Shown piece after piece: positions 1 through 56,815 of a stretch of 57,408 nt of DNA. A program made the position numbers and the translations under genes. The notes below the pieces were generated by a model that saw nothing but the letters and a program-made list of their open reading frames with translations, had not been told where the DNA came from and did no database searches. Source of the stretch: Octopus bimaculoides (lineage: Eukaryota). Position 1 is the first letter of the stretch, and every line of letters begins with the position of its first letter. Where the stretch lies: positions 34,042,117-34,099,524 of the forward strand of contig NC_068998.1 in assembly GCF_001194135.2 (NCBI RefSeq). The letters run 5' to 3'.

Positions 1-66
1 ACACAGACAGACACACAGACAGACACACAAACAGACACACAGACAGACACACAGACACACATTCTC

Positions 67-100
<34 letters not shown>
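1..100. repeat. Compound microsatellite (ACAG/AC)n then (AT)n
   Basis: Direct inspection of the sequence. Confidence 0.95.
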
Positions 101-101
<1 letters not shown>

Positions 102-236
102 GTATAAATAATTTACGTATGAAAGAGGTGACCTCAAATTTTAGTGATGCACACATACAGACACACATTCTTAGTTTTATATATAAAGATATATAAGGTA
201 AAGATAATTATGGTTGGTGTATGGGGTTACCCCAGG

Positions 237-354
237 TTTCATGTCTACAGAGCGCTTAGCTTTACACCATCTTTTCAGACCCTAGTGGTTAGGGGCCACT
301 CGTCATTAGGGTCTGAAGAGATGCTGTAAAGCTAAGTGCTTTATGGATGTAAAA
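237..354 (+). ncRNA. Long hairpin, candidate pre-miRNA or fold-back element
   Basis: 251-287 pairs with 304-340 over 37 bp with one C-C mismatch and three G-U pairs; loop 288-303 is 16 nt. The stem extends imperfectly to 237/354. The hairpin is certain; its function is not. Confidence 0.4.
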
Positions 355-450
355 TACAGGATGTTGACCAACTATAATTATCCCTTTCTAATCATTCTAC
401 TGTTCTATATCTTAGAGTGTGCTTCCTTTTCAGATTTATGATTTACTGAC

Positions 451-5095: not shown

Positions 5096-5396
5096 NNNNN
5101 NNNNNNNNNNNNNNNNNNNNNNNNNNNNNNNNNNNNNNNNNNNNNNNNNNNNNNNNNNNNNNNNNNNNNNNNNNNNNNNNNNNNNNNNNNNNNNNNNNNN
5201 NNNNNNNNNNNNNNNNNNNNNNNNNNNNNNNNNNNNNNNNNNNNNNNNNNNNNNNNNNNNNNNNNNNNNNNNNNNNNNNNNNNNNNNNNNNNNNNNNNNN
5301 NNNNNNNNNNNNNNNNNNNNNNNNNNNNNNNNNNNNNNNNNNNNNNNNNNNNNNNNNNNNNNNNNNNNNNNNNNNNNNNNNNNNNNNNNNNNNNNN
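5096..5396. other. Assembly gap (301 N)
   Basis: N-run flanked by (AT)n. Confidence 1.
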
Positions 5397-9099: not shown

Positions 9100-9495
9100 T
9101 GCAGGCATGGCTGTGCAGTAAGAAATTTGCTTTCCATGTGGTTCCAGGTTCTGTCCTACTGCATGGCACCTTGAGCAAGTGTCTTCTACTATAACCCTGG
9201 GCTGACCAAAACCTTGTGAGTGTATTTCGCAGACAGAAACTGAAAGAAGCCCATTATATATATATATGTGTGTGTGTGTGTTTGTGTCTGTGGTTGTTCA
9301 CCACTGCTGCTTTAGAACTAGTGTTGGTGTGTTTACATCTCTTTAACTAAACAATTTGGCAAAAGAGATTGATAGAATAAGTACCAGGCTTAAAAAGAAG
9401 TACTAAAATACTAAAATGTGACTAAAACACTTCAAGGCAGTACCCCAGCATGGCCACAGTCTAATGACTGAAACAAGTAAAAGATAAAAGAAAAG
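9100..9495 (+). mobile_element. tRNA-derived SINE family A, full length
   Basis: GCAGGCATGGCTGTGCAG head, GGTTCTGTCC B-box-like motif, internal (AT)/(GT)n, 3' CAGCATGGCCACAGTCTAATGACTGAAACAAGTAAAAGATAAAAG. Confidence 0.9.
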
Positions 9496-10665: not shown

Positions 10666-10714
10666 NNNNNNNNNNNNNNNNNNNNNNNNNNNNNNNNNNN
10701 NNNNNNNNNNNNNN
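10666..10714. other. Assembly gap (49 N)
   Basis: N-run. Confidence 1.
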
Positions 10715-10914
10715 TTAATTAATAAATCAATTAATAATTAATAATTTTTACCAAGCCCATCGGTATGAAAGCACCATTATTGGTGGAGAACTTATTCAAA
10801 AGTTCATATATTTATAAATATATGAACTTTTGAATAAGTTCTCCACCAATAATGGTGCTTTCATACCGATGGGCTTGGTAAAAATTATTAATTATTAATT
10901 GATTTATTAATTAA
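10715..10914. repeat. Perfect 200-bp spacerless palindrome abutting a gap
   Basis: Centre between 10814 and 10815 (TTTA|TAAA). Positions sum to 21629 and pair from the centre out to the gap edge; each arm is exactly 100 bp. Confidence 0.9.
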
Positions 10915-12411: not shown

Positions 12412-14273
12412 TATTATTATTATTATTATTATTCAGTAATTTTATTTTTATAGCGTGCTTTCACTTCACTACCGAGTGCAGCTCTGTGTGCCTTGGCTAT
12501 GTGCTGTGGTTTGCTGTGATGCTCTTATGGTTACTGCATTGAAAGTGTTTTGTATAAGATGTGTGCAGTGCCCAGTAGGGTAATTTTCTGTATGTTATAT
12601 ATATTTGTAAGTCCTGGTGTTTTTGTTATGTATTTGTCGATAGGAATTGTTTCTGCTTTTAGATTCCACATTCGAGTTACCTCTATTTCCAGGTCTTTCT
12701 ATTTTTAAAGTTTTCCCATTTCTTTTAGAGAGCCGTTGTCATCTGCTGGTATTGATACATCAATTAGAAAGTATTTTTTTCTTCATGATCTCTGACAACT
12801 ATATCCGGCCTATTGGCCTTAATTTCTCTGTCTGTGTATATTGGCATATCCCAGAGTATGGTTGCTTTCTCGTTTTCTGTGACCTTTTCTGGCGTGTGTT
12901 TATACCATCTTTTTTCTGTTGTTATTCCATAGTGTTGGCATAGCTTCCAGTGTATATAGGTCCCAGCTCTGTCGTGTCTGTGAATATATTCCTTCTTAGC
13001 CAGGACTGGGCAGCCAGAGATAATATGATTTANNNNNNNNNNNNNNNNNNNNNNNNNNNNNNNNNNNNNNNNNNNNNNNNNNNNNNNNNNNNNNNNNNNN
13101 NNNNNNNNNNNNNNNNNNNNNNNNNNNNNNNNNNNNNNNNNNNNNNNNNNNNNNNNNNNNNNNNNNNNNNNNNNNNNNNNNNNNNNNNNNNNNNNNNNNN
13201 NNNNNNNNNNNNNNNNNNNNNNNNNNNNNNNNNNNNNNNNNNNNNNNNNNNNNNNNNNNNNNNNNNNNNNNNNNNNNNNNNNNNNNNNNNNNNNNNNNNN
13301 NNNNNNNNNNNNNNNNNNNNNNNNNNNNNNNNNNNNNNNNNNNNNNNNNNNNNNNNNNNNNNNNNNNNNNNNNNNNNNNNNNNNNNNNNNNNNNNNNNNN
13401 NNNNNNNNNNNNNNNNNNNNNNNNNNNNNNNNNNNNNNNNNNNNNNNNNNNNNNNNNNNNNNNNNNNNNNNNNNNNNNNNNNNNNNNNNNNNNNNNNNNN
13501 NNNNNNNNNNNNNNNNNNNNNNNNNNNNNNNNNNNNNNNNNNNNNNNNNNNNNNNNNNNNNNNNNNNNNNNNNNNNNNNNNNNNNNNNNNNNNNNNNNNN
13601 NNNNNNNNNNNNNNNNNNNNNNNNNNNNNNNNNNNNNNNNNNNNNNNNNNNNNNNNNNNNNNNNNNNNNNNNNNNNNNNNNNNNNNNNNNNNNNNNNNNN
13701 NNNNNNNNNNNNNNNNNNNNNNNNNNNNNNNNNNNNNNNNNNNNNNNNNNNNNNNNNNNNNNNNNNNNNNNNNNNNNNNNNNNNNNNNNNNNNNNNNNNN
13801 NNNNNNNNNNNNNNNNNNNNNNNNNNNNNNNNNNNNNNNNNNNNNNNNNNNNNNNNNNNNNNNNNNNNNNNNNNNNNNNNNNGAGCTGTTTTCAGTATTG
13901 ATCTAAGTCATCTATAGTATTCTTTCTTCATTTTCTCTTTCATTTGTGTGTGTTGTATCATATCTAGTTCATTGATTCCTAAGTATCTGTATGTCCGGCT
14001 TTGGTCTAATTCTCTTATTTCATTGGCTTTATCTAGTGTAATGTTGCTACTCTTAACTAGTTTTCCTCTTTTCAGGGTTGCTTTGGCACATTTTTCTAAT
14101 CCAAATTTCATATCTATTTCCCTGGTAAATCCATGTACTGTCTGTAGTGGTGTTTCCAGCTGTATATCATTTGTTGCATATAGTTTTAGGTCATCCATAT
14201 ATAAAAGGTGGCTGATTGTTTTGCTGTAACATTTGTATCGGCATCCAGTTCTATTTAGTATGTCAGATAAAGG

Positions 14274-14276
<3 letters not shown>
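12412..14276 (-). mobile_element. R4/Dong-like non-LTR retrotransposon, 5'-truncated, subfamily 1 (spans the gap)
   Basis: RT motif LLYMDDLKLY...FGLEKCAKATLKRGK...YRYLGI (ORF 13908-14198), C-terminal RLE with PD motif (RPDIVVRDHEEK) near 12780-12810, 3' UTR and (TAA)n tail at 12412-12433. Confidence 0.9.
13033..13882. other. Assembly gap (850 N) inside the LINE
   Basis: N-run; both flanks align to the copy at 32580-34320. Confidence 1.
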
Positions 14277-14307
<31 letters not shown>

Positions 14308-21192: not shown

Positions 21193-21656
21193 TGGGGGGG
21201 GGGGCTGAAATGTTCGTAGGCTGAGCAAGACACTCTCTTGGAATGTGACCAAATGAAGTTCATTTTTTAATATAGTTCCTCTTATTGTCCACACACTTCC
21301 ATTAGTGTTGCAATGCTTGGAGAGCATTGATGAAGAAGCTATCTTATTGGCCAAAAAAGTCATCAACAGCAGATAAGATGCAATACCAGCACCCTGCTAG
21401 ATGTTTTTCCATGTTGGGAAATAGATGATAATCAAATGGAACCAAATCACTAAAACAGGGAGGGTGATCAACCAGTTCAAAGCTAGTCACACACAGCCAT
21501 TGAAACCAAGGACTTGTTTTGCTGAAGCATTTGTCCTAATGAAAGAAGACCTCCTTCATCAGTTTTTCTGGGCGTTTGGTCTTGATAGTCTTTCGTAAGT
21601 GCCCGGACAATTTGGCATAGAACTCCCATTGATGGTGTGATCATTTTCAAGTGGTT
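21193..21656 (-). mobile_element. Mariner (Tc1/mariner) transposase 3' remnant with one TIR
   Basis: Minus strand reads LRKTIKTKRPEKLMKEVFFH*DK, FELVDHPPCFSDLVPFDYHLFPNMEKHLAG (YSPDLAP-DY-like motif) and a C-terminal KCVDNKGNYIKK-like segment. TIR-like GGGGGCTGAAATGTTCGTAGGCTG is preceded by TA. Confidence 0.85.
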
Positions 21657-21833
21657 ATGGTAGTAGCATGGTAATGATGATGATAATGGGTCAGTTGTGG
21701 TATTCAGAGAAAATCAAGAATGTAGATAGCTGGACAGTGAATGGCTTTTCATTGTGGACTTTAATAAGTCATCAGTTGTGCTAATTCAAAGGAGTGGCCA
21801 TGGCTGCTGATCATGTTGTTGTTGTTGTTGCTG

Positions 21834-22172
21834 CTCCTGACTGGCTGCCATGCTGGTGACATGTAAAAAGCACCATCCAAACATGGCTGATACCAGTGTC
21901 TCCTGACTGGTTCCCATGCCGATGGCACATAAAAAGCACTATTTGAACGTGACCAATGCCAGGCCCACCAAACTGGTTCCTGTGCTGGTAGCATGTAAAA
22001 AGCACCCACTACATTCTCGGAGTGGCTAGCATTAGGAAGGGCATCCAGACTTAGAAATATCGCCATATCAGACTGGAGCCTGGTGCTTCCAGACTTCAGT
22101 CAAACCATCTAACCCATGCCAGCATGGAAGACGGACATTAAATGATGATAATGATGATGATGATGATGATGA

Positions 22173-32649: not shown

Positions 32650-34320
32650 TAGTCTTATTTCTATCACGTGTTTTCACTGTATTACCGAGCGCAGCTGTGT
32701 GTGCCTTGGGTATGTGCTGTGGTTTGTTGTGATGCTCTTATTTTTACTGTATTGAAAGTGTTTCATGTAGGATGTGTGCAGTTCCTAGTAGTGCTATTTA
32801 CTGTATGTTATATATACTTGTTAGTCCTGGTGTTTTTGTTATGTAGTTGTCTGAATATTTTTATATCATACCTAATGTGCTTACTACAATAGGAATTGTT
32901 TCTGTTTTTAGACTCCAAATTCGAGTTACCTCTGTTTCCAGATTTTTGTATTTTGGTAATTTCTCCATTTCTTTTTGAGAAACATTGTCATCTGCTGGTA
33001 TTGATGCATCGATTAAAAAGCATTTCTTCTTTTTGATGATCTCTCACAACTTTATCGAACCATAGTGTTAGCACTGCTTCCAGTGTATATAGATCCCAAT
33101 TCTGGCATGTCTGTGAATGTATTCCTTCTTAGCTAGGATTGGGCAGCCAGAGACAATATGATTCATTGTTTCTTGTCCATCTCTACATATTCTACAGTTA
33201 CTTGTATTTCTTTTCATTACATGTTTTTGGAAATTTCTCCAGAGAAGGCTTTGATCTTGTGCTACAATTAAAAATCCTTCAGTCTCTGCTTTGAATCCTG
33301 AGTTTCTCAGCCATTGTTGGGATTTTGCTTTGTCTATTTCTTTTCTGTTTAGTTTAACCCAGTATTTGCCATGAAGGGGCTTTTCTTGCCATCGTTTTAT
33401 CATGATCCATTGCTGTTCCAGTTTTGGTTTTGATTTCAGTTGTTTTACAGCTTTTGGTGTTTCCTCTTTTTCTTCATAGTTGTTAGGTACTATGACTTCT
33501 TGTTTGTATTTGTCAGCTTCCTTAAAGACTGAAAACAGTTTTTTGTTTTGTTCATGCTTTGTGGCTGTTTGTATTAGTTTTCCTTGCTTTTGAAGTAGGT
33601 ATTTCTGTAGTCCTATGGTGGTTATTTTGTAATAGTTTTCTAGATATATAAGGTCTCTACCACCTTCCATATGTCGTAAATATAACCTTTCTATGTCAGA
33701 TTTTGGGTGGCGCATCCTAAATCCTATGATTTTTTTTGTTGTTTTACTGTCTACTTTGATTGGTTCAATTAGTGTCCAGTTGAGAATATTGTAGCTGTAA
33801 CTGGAATGGCTAGTGTGTTGATACATATTATCATGTTTTTTTGCATTGAACTCTGTTTTCAGTATTAATCTAACTTGTCTATAGTATTCTTTTCTTATCT
33901 TCTCTTTCATTTGTGTGTGTTGTATCATATCCAGTTAATTGATCCCTAAACATTTGTATGTCCGGATTTGGTCTAATTCTTTTATTTCATTTGCTTTATC
34001 TAGTGTGATGTTGCTATTCTTAACTAGATTTCTTCATTTCAAGGTTGCTTTGGCACATTTTTGTAAGCCAAATTCCATGTTTATTTCTTTGGTAAATCCA
34101 TGTACTGTCTGTAGTGGTGTTTCCAGCTGTTTATCATTTGTACCATACAGTTTTAGATTGTCCATATATAAGAGGTTGCTGATTGTTTTGCTGTAACAGA
34201 TGTATCCACATCCAGTTCTGATTAGCATGTCAGATAAAGGTGTCAGTGTCAAGCAGAAAAGGAGTGGCGAGAGTGTGTCTCCCTGGAATATTCCTCTTTA
34301 TTTTTGTTTGCAGGGCATTG
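32580..34320 (-). mobile_element. R4/Dong-like LINE, subfamily 1, 5'-truncated in RT
   Basis: GIFQGDTLSPLLFCL...LLYMDNLKLY (RT), HPKSDIERLYL...GGRDL, CRICRDGQETMNHIVSGC (CCHC knuckle), RHARIGIYIHW; (GTT)n/(ATT)n tail at 32580-32646; deletion of about 120 bp at 33056-33061. Confidence 0.95.
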
Positions 34321-34640: not shown

Positions 34641-35005
34641 TCATCATCATCATCATCGTCATTTAACGTCCGCTTTCCATGCTAGCATGGCTTGGATGAT
34701 TTGATTGAGGATTGGTGAACCAGATGGCTACACCAGGCTCCAATCTGATTTGGCAAAGTTTCTACAGCTGTATGCCCTTCCTAACGCCAACTACTCTGAG
34801 AGTGTAGTGGGTGCTTTTACGTGCTACCGGCATGAAGGCCAGTCAGGCGGTACTGGCAACAGCCATGCTCAAAATGGTGTATTTTACGTGCCATCTGCAC
34901 AGGAGCCAGTTTGGCGGCACTGGCAACAATCTCGCTCGAATGTCTTTGTACGTGCCATCCGGCACAAGTGCCAGGAAGGCGATGCTGGGCACAGGTGCCA
35001 TTGAT
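34641..35005 (-). mobile_element. Family D retroposon (RTE-type tail, internal repeats of about 65 bp)
   Basis: (CAT)n then TTTAACGTCCGCTTTCCATGCTAGCATGG...GGATGCCCTTCC-like block; TACGTGC recurs with period 64-67; inverted homolog of 21834-22176. Confidence 0.85.
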
Positions 35006-35014
35006 GGTACACAC

Positions 35015-35037
35015 ACAGATATATATATATACATATG

Positions 35038-35080
<43 letters not shown>

Positions 35081-55060: not shown

Positions 55061-55099
55061 AAACATATATCATAAAAGGATTAATTAAAGATTTTGGAA

Positions 55100-56095
55100 A
55101 ACAACTTTTTTTCTGTCATGTGCATACAAGGCATTAACTGTTCATTTCTTTTGTTCCAACTATCAATGCCTTGAGTCAAACTTCTCAGTTTTTCACTCAA
55201 ACAAACGTTACACCACATCTTTGATTTAAAGTTCTCTATCCTGTAAGTTCTGTTGTCTACAATATACCAGGTAATTTTGAATTCATTAGGACTTGTATCA
55301 TGCAAAAATCATATAAACGCTGATGCACATTTTCTGTCGAGGCCAAGAAATGAATGTTTCTGCTTGTAATAATGGTTTTTGAGTGTGCACCAAAATGTTT
55401 TAGATTGATCACTGCTGTTTGATACAACCTTTTCATTGTATACTATCAACTTTGCCAGACAGTTACTGTCTAGTGGACACTTCTTGTGGATTCTGAGGTT
55501 GCATGATCTTTGTTGGTTAGCTGTTTGCATCTCTCTTTTATTCATCTTTGTAGCATTATAACCTCTGATATAATACAAAATTTTTCCAAGCTAAATAGCT
55601 AACCTTAACACAATTCCTATTCAAGATTTTTCTATACTTATGCCCCTGCAGAAAATGGTGATCTATTAAATCAAGAAATTCACTAGGTTAAATACTGGGT
55701 TGTACCATAAAATATTCCTTTTCTTTCTACTACTATTCTTATGTTGTGTATTTCCAGTGTTTTTATGTATCTAATCTTATCAGAGAACCCACTATTTCTA
55801 TGCACTTCATTATAATACCCAGCTGCACCCATAAAAGCATCTTCATTAGAATATAATGAAAATATATTTTTTACTAATTTTGTTAACCAAGTTCCTCAGT
55901 ACACAAGGTGGGTGATTCGATTGTCTATGCATATACAGTAACTTCTCATTTGGGTTGTGATATGGTCTGAAACTATCATAGTCCAGTCTTAACTTTGCAT
56001 CAAGAAAATTAAGAGCAATAAGGCTTCTATATATAGTAATGTTAAGTCCTATTTCCTGAAATATTTTAATCAAGTCTTTCCTAAATCTATCTAAC
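55100..56095 (-). mobile_element. Penelope-like element remnant (RT thumb, linker, GIY-YIG), Naiad-type
   Basis: NFLDAKLRL...RPYHNPNEKLLYMHRQSNHPP, a RNILWYNP-like segment, ILNRNCVKVSY, CNLR...CPLDSNCL...IVY, KITW.I, CNVCLSEK, NKRNE...CMH; several frameshifts. Confidence 0.85.
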
Positions 56096-56505
56096 TTATG
56101 ATTTCACTAACCTAGGCTCCATCATATGCTCCCATGGACACACTGAATAATTCGTTCCCACTTTTCTTAGCCCATATGTTGTTATTGAAAACCAGGAGTG
56201 ATTTTCTTGACTGCATATGTGTGTGTGTGTGTGTGTGTGTATTATGTAGTCTTTTATGATTGCATCAAATAAATAAAATTCTACCAAAACAGCTGTTGTA
56301 AATTTTAGATGCCATTTGTTTATTTTACATACATGCATCACACCAAGGACCCCCTCTGATTTGGATCTATGGTTTAAATTGGACTTGGTGCTTACATATT
56401 TATAGTATCCAATGAATGCTTGAGGTATTCAATGATGTTTATTTCAATGGCAGCTCTATGTTAATGTACCTCTCTATTTCTGGTATCCTACAGGCTGATT
56501 CTTAT

Positions 56506-56507
<2 letters not shown>

Positions 56508-56580
<73 letters not shown>

Positions 56581-56589
56581 CGTGTGTGT
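56508..56589. repeat. (CT)n(AT)n microsatellite
   Basis: Direct inspection. Confidence 0.95.
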
Positions 56590-56815
56590 ATATGTTTGCG
56601 TGTCTATGTTTGTCCCCCCAACATACATCACTTGACAACCGATGCTTGTGTGTTTACGTCCCTGTAAATTAGCAGCTCGGCAAAAGAGACTGATAGAATA
56701 GGTACTAGGTTTACAAAGAATAAGTCCTGGGGTCAGTTTGCTTGACTAAAGGCAGTGCACCACCATGGGTGCAGTCAAAAGACTGAAACAAGTAAAAAAA
56801 AAATAAAAAGAAAGA

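What the first reader, a model, noticed from the sequence alone, without database searches (positions are those of the whole stretch)
237..354. Strand-biased long hairpin of pre-miRNA size in otherwise unique DNA
Seen: 251-287 pairs with 304-340 (37 bp, one C-C mismatch, three G-U pairs, 16-nt loop) and the stem extends to 237/354. Across the whole stem, 7 of 10 non-Watson-Crick positions are G-U on the + strand and would be A-C mismatches on the - strand. No other copy is visible in the window. A small GGGG-TTA-CCCC hairpin sits just upstream (222-234). Known: octopods carry a large lineage-specific miRNA expansion and extensive ADAR editing of dsRNA. Inference: this may be an RNA structure selected on the + strand (novel miRNA or editing substrate) rather than a neutrally decaying inverted repeat.
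Basis: partly seen in the sequence, partly recalled or inferred. Interest (0 to 1): 0.7.

Follow-up and report, generated by a model that had tools for sequence, protein, structure and literature searches.

The report
Decayed 180-bp DNA palindrome, not shown miRNA
The long hairpin is real, but it is the core of a roughly 180-base imperfect DNA palindrome whose shape fits a decaying inverted repeat or small transposon relic better than a microRNA gene, and nothing available here could test expression, copy number or conservation.

Summary
Window 241-350 folds into a 46-bp main stem over 48 stacked positions. It has two 1x1 mismatches and a 14-nt apical loop. MFE is -70.6 kcal/mol on + and -55.5 on -, and no shuffle comes close. 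Of the non-Watson-Crick positions in the main stem, 8 are G-U on +, 1 is A-C type and 1 is C-C.

The hairpin is only the centre of a larger inverted repeat, 203-382. Each arm is about 90 nt with a 6-nt indel, and the outermost 16 bp pair almost perfectly. This points to a DNA-level palindrome, either a foldback or MITE-like relic or a local inverted duplication.

The stem is about 13 bp longer and much more perfect than a canonical Drosha substrate. The basal UG and a correctly placed CNNC are absent. Rfam gives only sub-threshold generic hairpin hits.

There is no second copy in the 57 kb. Every public collection I could scan lacks the host's DNA, as SINE and LINE controls showed. Copy number, orthologues and expression are therefore untested.

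The G-U excess is nominally significant (p about 0.02-0.04) but weakened by how the hairpin was ascertained. If transcribed, the duplex would be a good ADAR or Dicer substrate. A selected function is not shown. Interest is low.

The parts
203..218 (.). Outer left segment of the palindrome (GATAATTATGGTTGGT)
   Evidence: It pairs with 367-382 at 15 of 16 Watson-Crick positions, and the exception is G212-U373. It lies in the register i+j=585, which is 6 nt offset from the core.
219..240 (.). Diverged left segment that contains the GGGG-TTA-CCCC mini-hairpin (222-234)
   Evidence: The arm-to-arm alignment shows a 6-nt indel and low identity here. The mini-hairpin forms in the MFE on both strands.
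241..288 (+). 5' arm of the main stem
   Evidence: It forms 46 bp with 303-350, interrupted by C248/A343 and C267/C324.
289..302 (+). Apical loop (14 nt) with an optional 3-bp mini-helix, 292-294 with 299-301
   Evidence: MFE structure.
303..350 (+). 3' arm of the main stem
   Evidence: Across 241-250/341-350, all six differences from a perfect complement are transitions.
351..366 (.). Diverged right segment, the counterpart of 219-240
   Evidence: alignment. It is mostly unpaired in the MFE.
367..382 (.). Outer right segment of the palindrome (ACCAACTATAATTATC)
   Evidence: It pairs with 203-218.

Best explanation
The feature is a roughly 180-bp imperfect DNA palindrome at 203-382. It has two arms of about 90 nt around a 14-16-nt spacer. 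It arose at the DNA level and has since decayed, mostly by transitions. The flagged hairpin is simply its best-preserved centre.

The most likely origin is either a non-autonomous foldback or MITE-like DNA-transposon relic, or a one-off local inverted duplication.

It is not a dedicated small-RNA gene. If the region is transcribed, in either direction, the RNA would form a near-perfect duplex of about 46-48 bp. Such a duplex is expected to be promiscuously deaminated by ADAR and could be diced into siRNA-like products, as a by-product rather than a selected function.

- Shown: the anatomy, the strength of the fold, the strand asymmetry, single copy within 57 kb, and the poor fit to canonical pri-miRNA geometry.
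- Inferred: the origin, the neutrality, and what the RNA would do.
For: - **Extent.** Self-complementarity runs over 203-382, not just 237-354: BLAST self-inverted match, fold of 195-392 at -98.1 kcal/mol, z = -10.8, and arm-to-arm alignment with one 6-nt indel.
- **Both strands fold.** Both fold far better than shuffles, as expected for a DNA inverted repeat.
- **Substitution pattern.** In the ungapped register 241-290, differences between the arms are 10 transitions against 2 transversions. That fits mutational decay of an originally exact repeat.
- **Poor fit to a Drosha substrate.** The stem spans 48 positions with only two 1x1 mismatches. Microprocessor recognises a ~35-bp stem with a mismatched GHG, basal UG, apical UGUG and downstream CNNC (PMC6298569). 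Here there is no UG at the basal junction, and the first CNNC downstream is at 369-372, about 30 nt from the predicted cut (sequence).
- **No family match.** No Rfam family reaches its threshold.
- **Context.** The surroundings are repeat-rich and show no coding evidence beyond retroelement fragments.
- **Precedent.** Palindromic MITEs that fold into stable hairpins are documented: Made1 has two 37-bp TIRs around 6 bp (PMC1784062). MITEs and Tc1-Mariner elements are annotated in Octopus vulgaris (PMC13282606).
- **Element ends.** They are TA-flanked in two possible registers. The left end, TTATGGTTGGTG, resembles the Hsmar1/Made1 end TTAGGTTGGTG. This is a lead only.
Against: - **Strand bias.** G-U outnumbers A-C-type mismatches 8:1 in the main stem and 9:1 with the outer helix (p = 0.039 and 0.021 two-sided). 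Strictly strand-symmetric neutral decay does not predict this. Local G+T excess on the + strand is absent, so transcription-associated mutational skew is not evident.
- **Uneven decay.** The inner 37 bp differ at 4 of 37 positions and the next 14 at 6 of 14 (Fisher p = 0.018). The outermost 16 bp are again nearly perfect.
- **MITE evidence lacking.** No second copy lies in the 57 kb. No unambiguous target-site duplication exists, because the TA lies inside the palindromic ATAATTAT. The MITE version therefore has no positive copy-number evidence.
- **TIR resemblance weak.** It is in the top 0.9% of windows for one arm and 12% for the other, and it was chosen post hoc.
Confidence: 0.6

Rival explanations
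1. It is a + strand RNA structure kept by selection inside a longer transcript (intron, UTR or lncRNA). It would act, for example, as an ADAR-recruiting or editing-inducing duplex, or as another structured regulatory element. Wobble pairs are tolerated on the transcribed strand, while A-C mismatches are purged.
For: - The + strand is 15 kcal/mol more stable than the - strand.
- G-U to A-C is 8-9:1.
- Local base composition does not explain the bias.
- The inner core is better preserved than the region around it.
- In octopus most A-to-I editing lies in introns and 3'UTRs, where hairpins are enriched (PMC9699675).
Against: - The p-values are modest, uncorrected and subject to ascertainment. The outer part alone is 6:1.
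- There is no evidence of transcription, no gene or exon in the window, and no orthologue to show covariation.
- The 5' neighbours of the wobble Gs are U or A in 7 of 10 cases. That roughly matches what the window's overall base composition (~32% G+C) would give anyway, so there is no ADAR-context signal.
Confidence: 0.15
2. It is a young, lineage-specific small-RNA locus: a miRNA or a hairpin endo-siRNA (hpRNA) precursor. It may have been born from the palindrome in the way mir-548 arose from Made1.
For: - It is a stable hairpin on the + strand.
- Generic miRNA covariance models align end to end, with mir-3473 at E = 1.6e-4 and mir-586 at E = 2.2e-4.
- A GUG sits at the apical junction (285-287).
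- There is precedent for MITE-derived miRNAs (PMC1784062).
- Octopus has 90 novel miRNA families, and the authors consider that count an underestimate (PMC9699675).
Against: - All Rfam scores are far below gathering thresholds.
- The stem is about 13 bp too long and too perfect. The basal UG is missing and CNNC is not at the canonical position.
- A predicted Drosha product would be about 87 nt.
- Only ~162-164 curated miRNA genes exist per octopus genome, against what must be very many inverted repeats. The prior is therefore low.
- The sequence was not found in the papers or the held supplements.
Confidence: 0.07
3. It is an assembly artefact: a chimeric fold-back join, like the perfect palindrome at 10715-10914 next to an N gap.
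For: The same window contains a 100% perfect 200-bp palindrome that starts exactly at a gap edge. Fold-back artefacts may therefore exist in this assembly.
Against: - The arms here differ at 12 of 50 core positions, carry a 6-nt indel, and have a 14-nt unique spacer.
- No gap is nearby; the first N is at 5096.
- An artefactual fold-back would be exact.
Confidence: 0.02

Closest known systems
Palindromic MITEs of the Tc1/mariner superfamily (Made1-type, Stowaway-like)
   Same: - It is a short, non-coding, nearly palindromic element whose RNA folds into a very stable hairpin. The inner arms are 37 nt, as in Made1.
- The ends are TA-flanked.
- The left end resembles the Hsmar1/Made1 end.
   Different: - It is about 180 bp rather than 80 bp.
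- The TA cannot be separated from the palindrome itself.
- No second copy was seen, and family copy number is untestable here.
- The right-end resemblance is not above background.
Canonical bilaterian pri-miRNA hairpins (MirGeneDB-type, including the octopus novel families)
   Same: - It is a single stem-loop of pre-miRNA-like overall size.
- The arms share more than 16 complementary nucleotides.
- The loop is longer than 8 nt.
- An apical GUG is present.
   Different: - The stem has 48 stacked positions against ~35 bp.
- It is almost free of bulges.
- There is no basal UG, and CNNC is misplaced.
- Complementarity resumes beyond the basal junction (16-bp outer helix).
- There is no read evidence and no family match.
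Long inverted-repeat dsRNA substrates of ADAR (hyper-edited hairpins in introns and 3'UTRs)
   Same: It is a near-perfect intramolecular duplex of more than 40 bp formed by an inverted repeat with a short spacer. Hairpins in introns and 3'UTRs are described as the ADAR substrates in octopus.
   Different: Transcription and editing of this locus are unknown. Classical examples are pairs of separate repeat copies, whereas this is a single compact palindrome.
Hairpin-RNA (hpRNA) endo-siRNA loci of Drosophila
   Same: It is a long, nearly perfect inverted repeat that could be diced (my own knowledge of the class).
   Different: Known hpRNAs usually have much longer arms, and they are defined by 21-nt phased reads and targets. 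None of that is available here.

Membership tests
Animal miRNA gene (MirGeneDB/Microprocessor criteria) | Reads of 20-26 nt from both arms with 2-nt offsets and homogeneous 5' ends | not testable with these tools
   No small-RNA data are accessible. The sequence is absent from the text and held supplements of PMC9699675, but the precursor file is not held.
Animal miRNA gene (MirGeneDB/Microprocessor criteria) | Stem of about 35 bp between the basal and apical junctions | tested here: not met
   The main stem spans 48 positions (46 bp plus two 1x1 mismatches). The criterion comes from PMC6298569.
Animal miRNA gene (MirGeneDB/Microprocessor criteria) | Sequence motifs: basal UG, apical UGU/GUG, CNNC 16-18 nt downstream of the 3' cut | tested here: inconclusive
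   - The basal junction reads UUUC, with no UG.
- A GUG is present at 285-287, next to the loop.
- The first downstream CNNC is CAAC at 369-372, about 30 nt from the predicted cut (sequence).
- These motifs are facultative, and their use in molluscs is not established.
Animal miRNA gene (MirGeneDB/Microprocessor criteria) | Match to a described miRNA family | tested here: not met
   The best Rfam hits are 32.6, 31.5, 30.7 and 30.7 bits against gathering scores of 71.8, 89, 330 and 93. Rfam may not contain the octopus-specific families.
MITE (non-autonomous TIR DNA transposon) | Terminal inverted repeats | tested here: met
   The outermost 16 bp, 203-218 with 367-382, pair at 15 of 16 Watson-Crick positions, and the whole element is an inverted repeat. 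This is trivially true of any palindrome.
MITE (non-autonomous TIR DNA transposon) | Target-site duplication flanking the element | tested here: inconclusive
   TA is present on both sides in two registers (205-206 with 379-380, and 209-210 with 375-376). It lies inside the self-complementary ATAATTAT, so it is not diagnostic. No longer direct repeat flanks 203/382.
MITE (non-autonomous TIR DNA transposon) | Many dispersed copies in the genome | not testable with these tools
   - The window holds one copy.
- Scans of the metagenome, viral and prokaryote collections found none.
- The host's own SINE is also absent from those collections. Searches found nothing, and the single hit is a chance 20-mer.
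- A host LINE ORF has only 6 relatives in the protein collection.
- The hairpin ORF search found nothing, which for the same reason is uninformative.
MITE (non-autonomous TIR DNA transposon) | Ends related to an autonomous element | tested here: inconclusive
   The left end matches the Hsmar1 end at 11 of 11 positions with one inserted base. That score is in the top 0.9% of windows. The right end is at 12%. No autonomous relative was identified in the window.
ADAR hyper-editing substrate | Long, nearly perfect intramolecular dsRNA | tested here: met
   A 46-bp stem at -70.6 kcal/mol on + and -55.5 kcal/mol on -.
ADAR hyper-editing substrate | The locus is transcribed and shows A-to-G mismatches in RNA reads | not testable with these tools
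   No transcriptome data are accessible, and no gene or exon was detected in the window.

The most novel reading that the evidence does not exclude
The palindrome is a young, lineage-specific small-RNA or editing-related locus expressed from the + strand. It could be a proto-miRNA or hpRNA born from an inverted duplication or MITE, or a duplex retained to recruit ADAR. The G-U over A-C excess would then be a footprint of RNA-level purifying selection.
Probability: 0.1. Interest if true: 0.5.

Novelty: new member of a known kind. Interest (0 to 1): 0.2.

Why it matters
If it is just a decaying palindrome, it is one of many such repeats in a repeat-rich animal genome and matters little. It does illustrate how easily inverted repeats mimic pre-miRNAs.

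If the + strand bias proved to reflect selection, the locus would be a snapshot of a small-RNA gene or editing-inducing structure being born from a DNA palindrome. That would be relevant to how the cephalopod miRNA and editing repertoires expanded. The source of the novel miRNA loci is stated to be unknown in PMC9699675.

Tried and rejected
- **Rfam.** A permissive scan of 1-1500 gave only sub-threshold generic miRNA hairpin matches on both strands.
- **Literature, hairpin sequence.** Full-text searches for ten 15-mers from both arms, in both DNA and RNA alphabets, found nothing. A search of the held supplements of the octopus miRNA paper with 12-14-mers also found nothing. The held Data S2 is a k-mer table rather than precursor sequences.
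- **Copy number via spurious ORFs.** A word and HMMER search with the 40-aa translation across the hairpin returned no candidate. It is uninformative, because a certainly multi-copy LINE ORF from the window has only 6 relatives at 39-80% identity.
- **DNA scans.** Exact-pattern scans of the metagenome, viral and prokaryote-genome collections found no hairpin. The host SINE control also found nothing, apart from one chance 20-mer in a cyanobacterial MAG.
- **Exact protein look-ups.** Five window ORFs around the hairpin and elsewhere are not on record.
- **Organism identification.** The 'octopod' origin is therefore unverified. It rests on my recollection of the SINE.
- **Synteny anchor.** Pfam on all 112 ORFs of at least 60 aa gave only RVT_1 and zf-RVT.
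- **tRNA-like origin of the loop.** CTAGTGGTTAGG resembles a tRNA D-arm, but ARAGORN found nothing.
- **Transcription-associated skew.** No local G+T excess on the + strand exists to explain the G-U bias.
- **ADAR neighbour preference.** The wobble Gs show no signal beyond base composition.
- **TIR comparison inside the window.** Comparing the hairpin ends with a putative mariner relic at 21.2-21.7 kb gave no similarity, and Pfam does not support that relic.

Full report

Yes. The + strand RNA of 237-354 folds at -70.6 kcal/mol. Dinucleotide shuffles average -28.2 kcal/mol (sd 3.2), giving z = -13.4, and 0 of 200 shuffles fold as well.

The MFE has a main stem of 46 bp:
- 241-247 with 344-350
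- 249-266 with 325-342
- 268-288 with 303-323

Two 1x1 mismatches interrupt it, C248/A343 and C267/C324. The apical loop is 14 nt and can form a 3-bp mini-helix.

The - strand folds at -55.5 kcal/mol, z = -10.6. Both strands therefore make a long hairpin, and the + strand is 15 kcal/mol better.

Pattern search with 3 mismatches, BLAST with 7-nt words, and nhmmer --max with a profile of the two arms all find only the two arms themselves in the 57,408 bases.

In a sliding 120-nt fold of the whole window this is the best hairpin in complex sequence. The only stronger one is a perfect palindrome at 10715-10914 that touches an N gap. The other strong folders are microsatellites.

**2.

The inverted repeat does not stop at 237/354.
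- A self-inverted BLAST match covers 203-382.
- Folding 195-392 gives -98.1 kcal/mol, z = -10.8. It adds an outer 16-bp helix, 203-218 with 367-382. That helix has 15 Watson-Crick pairs and one G-U (G212/U373).
- Aligning the left arm with the reverse complement of the right arm shows homology over about 90 nt. There is one 6-nt indel and a poorly conserved stretch, 219-240 against 351-366, which holds the mini-hairpin.

The object is therefore a roughly 180-bp imperfect DNA palindrome. The flagged hairpin is its best-preserved centre.

In the ungapped register 241-290, differences between the arms are 10 transitions and 2 transversions. In 241-250/341-350 all six differences are transitions. 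That confirms true homology in the outer stem and a mutational origin of the mismatches.

**3. The strand bias**

| Region counted | G-U on + | A-C type | Other | Two-sided binomial p |
|---|---|---|---|---|
| MFE main stem | 8 | 1 (C248/A343) | 1 C-C | 0.039 |
| Main stem plus outer helix | 9 | 1 | 1 C-C | 0.021 |
| More inclusive counts | 9-10 | 2 | | 0.065 (9:2) or 0.039 (10:2) |

Every transition in a perfect stem yields either G-U or A-C on a given strand with equal probability if mutation is strand-symmetric. The excess is therefore nominally significant.

I looked for the obvious mutational explanation, a G+T excess on the + strand as left by transcription-associated asymmetry. I found none. 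After masking simple repeats, the first 5 kb have (G+T)-(A+C) = -0.013.

Two cautions weaken the inference.
A palindrome that decayed the other way would have looked shorter and less remarkable.
- Conditioning on the inner 37 bp, which would have been flagged anyway, the remaining stem gives 6:1. That is not significant.

Decay is also uneven. The inner 37 bp differ at 4 of 37 positions and the next 14 at 6 of 14 (Fisher p = 0.018). The outermost 16 bp are again nearly perfect.

**4. Is it a miRNA?**

The geometry argues against a canonical one. Microprocessor recognises a ~35-bp stem with a mismatched GHG, a basal UG, an apical UGUG and a downstream CNNC. It cuts 11 bp from the basal junction (PMC6298569).

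Here:
- The stem has 48 stacked positions with only two single mismatches.
- The basal junction reads UUUC.
- The nearest downstream CNNC is at 369-372, about 30 nt from the predicted 3' cut.
- Only an apical GUG (285-287) fits.
- A Drosha cut 11 bp above the base would give a precursor of about 87 nt.
- Complementarity resumes beyond the basal junction, which is typical of DNA inverted repeats.

Rfam gives only generic hairpin alignments on both strands, far below threshold:

| Family | Bits | Gathering score |
|---|---|---|
| mir-3473 | 32.6 | 71.8 |
| mir-586 | 31.5 | 89 |
| MIR869 | 30.7 | 330 |
| mir-1597 | 30.7 | 93 |

The sequence does not occur in the searchable literature or in the held supplements of the octopus miRNA study. 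That study's precursor file is not held, so this negative is weak.

The same paper reports only 162-164 curated miRNA genes per octopus genome. One hairpin of this quality per 57 kb would extrapolate to tens of thousands genome-wide, so the prior for a miRNA is low. This is a crude extrapolation from n = 1 and from my own figure for genome size.

**5. Is it a transposon relic?**

The form fits palindromic MITEs. Made1 consists of two 37-bp TIRs around 6 bp, folds into a very stable hairpin, and gave rise to mir-548 (PMC1784062). MITEs and abundant Tc1-Mariner elements are annotated in Octopus vulgaris (PMC13282606).

The ends can be read as TA-flanked. However, the TA lies inside the self-complementary ATAATTAT, so it is not diagnostic.

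The left end, TTATGGTTGGTG, resembles the Hsmar1/Made1 end TTAGGTTGGTG (sequence from PMC5714172). That alignment score is in the top 0.9% of 41-nt windows of this window. The right end reaches only the top 12%, and the comparison was chosen post hoc. I treat it as a lead.

The defining test is copy number, and it could not be run. The hairpin pattern is absent from the metagenome, viral and prokaryote-genome collections. The host's own high-copy SINE is absent too, and the single hit is a chance 20-mer. A LINE ORF from the window has only six relatives among 5.8 billion protein clusters, and none could be tied to a named organism. All these negatives, including the ORF-based search, say nothing about copy number in the host.

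**6. Context**

- The window is about 32% G+C, rich in microsatellites, and scaffolded with six N gaps.
- It carries three + strand copies of a tRNA-derived SINE-like repeat. One begins about 65 nt downstream of the palindrome.
- It carries non-LTR reverse-transcriptase fragments.
- No Pfam domain other than RVT_1 and zf-RVT was found in any ORF of at least 60 aa.

The hairpin is therefore intergenic or deep-intronic as far as can be seen. No exon was available to anchor a synteny search.

I recognise the SINE as octopus-like from memory, but no tool confirmed the organism.

**7. Verdict**

The best-supported reading (about 0.6) is a decaying DNA-level palindrome, either a MITE-like or foldback relic or a local inverted duplication. 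Its RNA, if made, would be an incidental but very good ADAR or Dicer substrate.

The rivals are:
- A + strand structure under selection (about 0.15). It is kept alive by the G-U excess and the uneven decay.
- A young miRNA or hpRNA (about 0.07).
- An assembly artefact (about 0.02). It is excluded in practice by the 12 core differences, the indel and the unique spacer.

The remaining probability covers origins not considered here.

The finding is a real but ordinary kind of feature. Its miRNA component is disfavoured.

Noticed in passing
window 10666-10914: A 100% perfect palindrome with two 100-nt arms and no spacer (10715-10814 with 10815-10914) begins exactly at the end of an N gap (10666-10714). 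This looks like a fold-back assembly artefact rather than biology.
   Followed up: partly
window ~447-800, ~9100-9400, ~56450-56800: Three + strand copies of a tRNA-derived SINE-like repeat. The conserved block AAAGAGACCGATAGAATAAGTACTA occurs with 0, 3 and 2 mismatches. I recall it as an octopus SINE, but no tool or paper search confirmed the organism.
   Followed up: partly
window 13911-14303 (-) and 33068-34200 (-): Fragments of non-LTR retrotransposon ORF2. Pfam gives RVT_1 at E = 1.2e-5 and 3.8e-8, and zf-RVT at E = 2e-4. Related short ORFs recur near 12.5, 14.4-14.7, 25 and 32 kb. The 286-aa ORF has only 6 database relatives, at 39-80% identity.
   Followed up: partly
window 21764-22099 (-) and ~34700-35070: Two copies of a repeat with an internal periodicity of about 60 nt. 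The ORFs share LQSD..LPNA.HSE.VVGAF, followed by repeated P(S)A.EPV motifs. The region folds strongly (-50 kcal/mol per 120 nt at 34951-35070).
   Followed up: no
window 21193-21713 (-): ORF pieces carry a motif that looks by eye like the C-terminal part of a mariner transposase (DHPPCFSDLVPFDYHLFPNMEKHLAG). Pfam found nothing even at E up to 1, and no end resembling the hairpin was seen nearby.
   Followed up: partly
window 55084-56103 (-): A run of ORFs (for example NHKLDRFRKDLIKIFQEIGLNITIY...FLDAKL...YMHRQSNHPP) looks like a degraded retroelement or Penelope-like coding region by eye. Pfam gave no significant hit.
   Followed up: partly
window 1-205 and many other sites: Dense microsatellites: (ACAGACAC)n at 1-60, (AT)n at 70-100, and long TA/CA/TG tracts at 1.4-1.7, 6.1-6.4, 11.3-11.7, 28.3-28.4 and 35.0-35.2 kb. 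They account for most of the 268 inverted-repeat pairs reported in the window.
   Followed up: no
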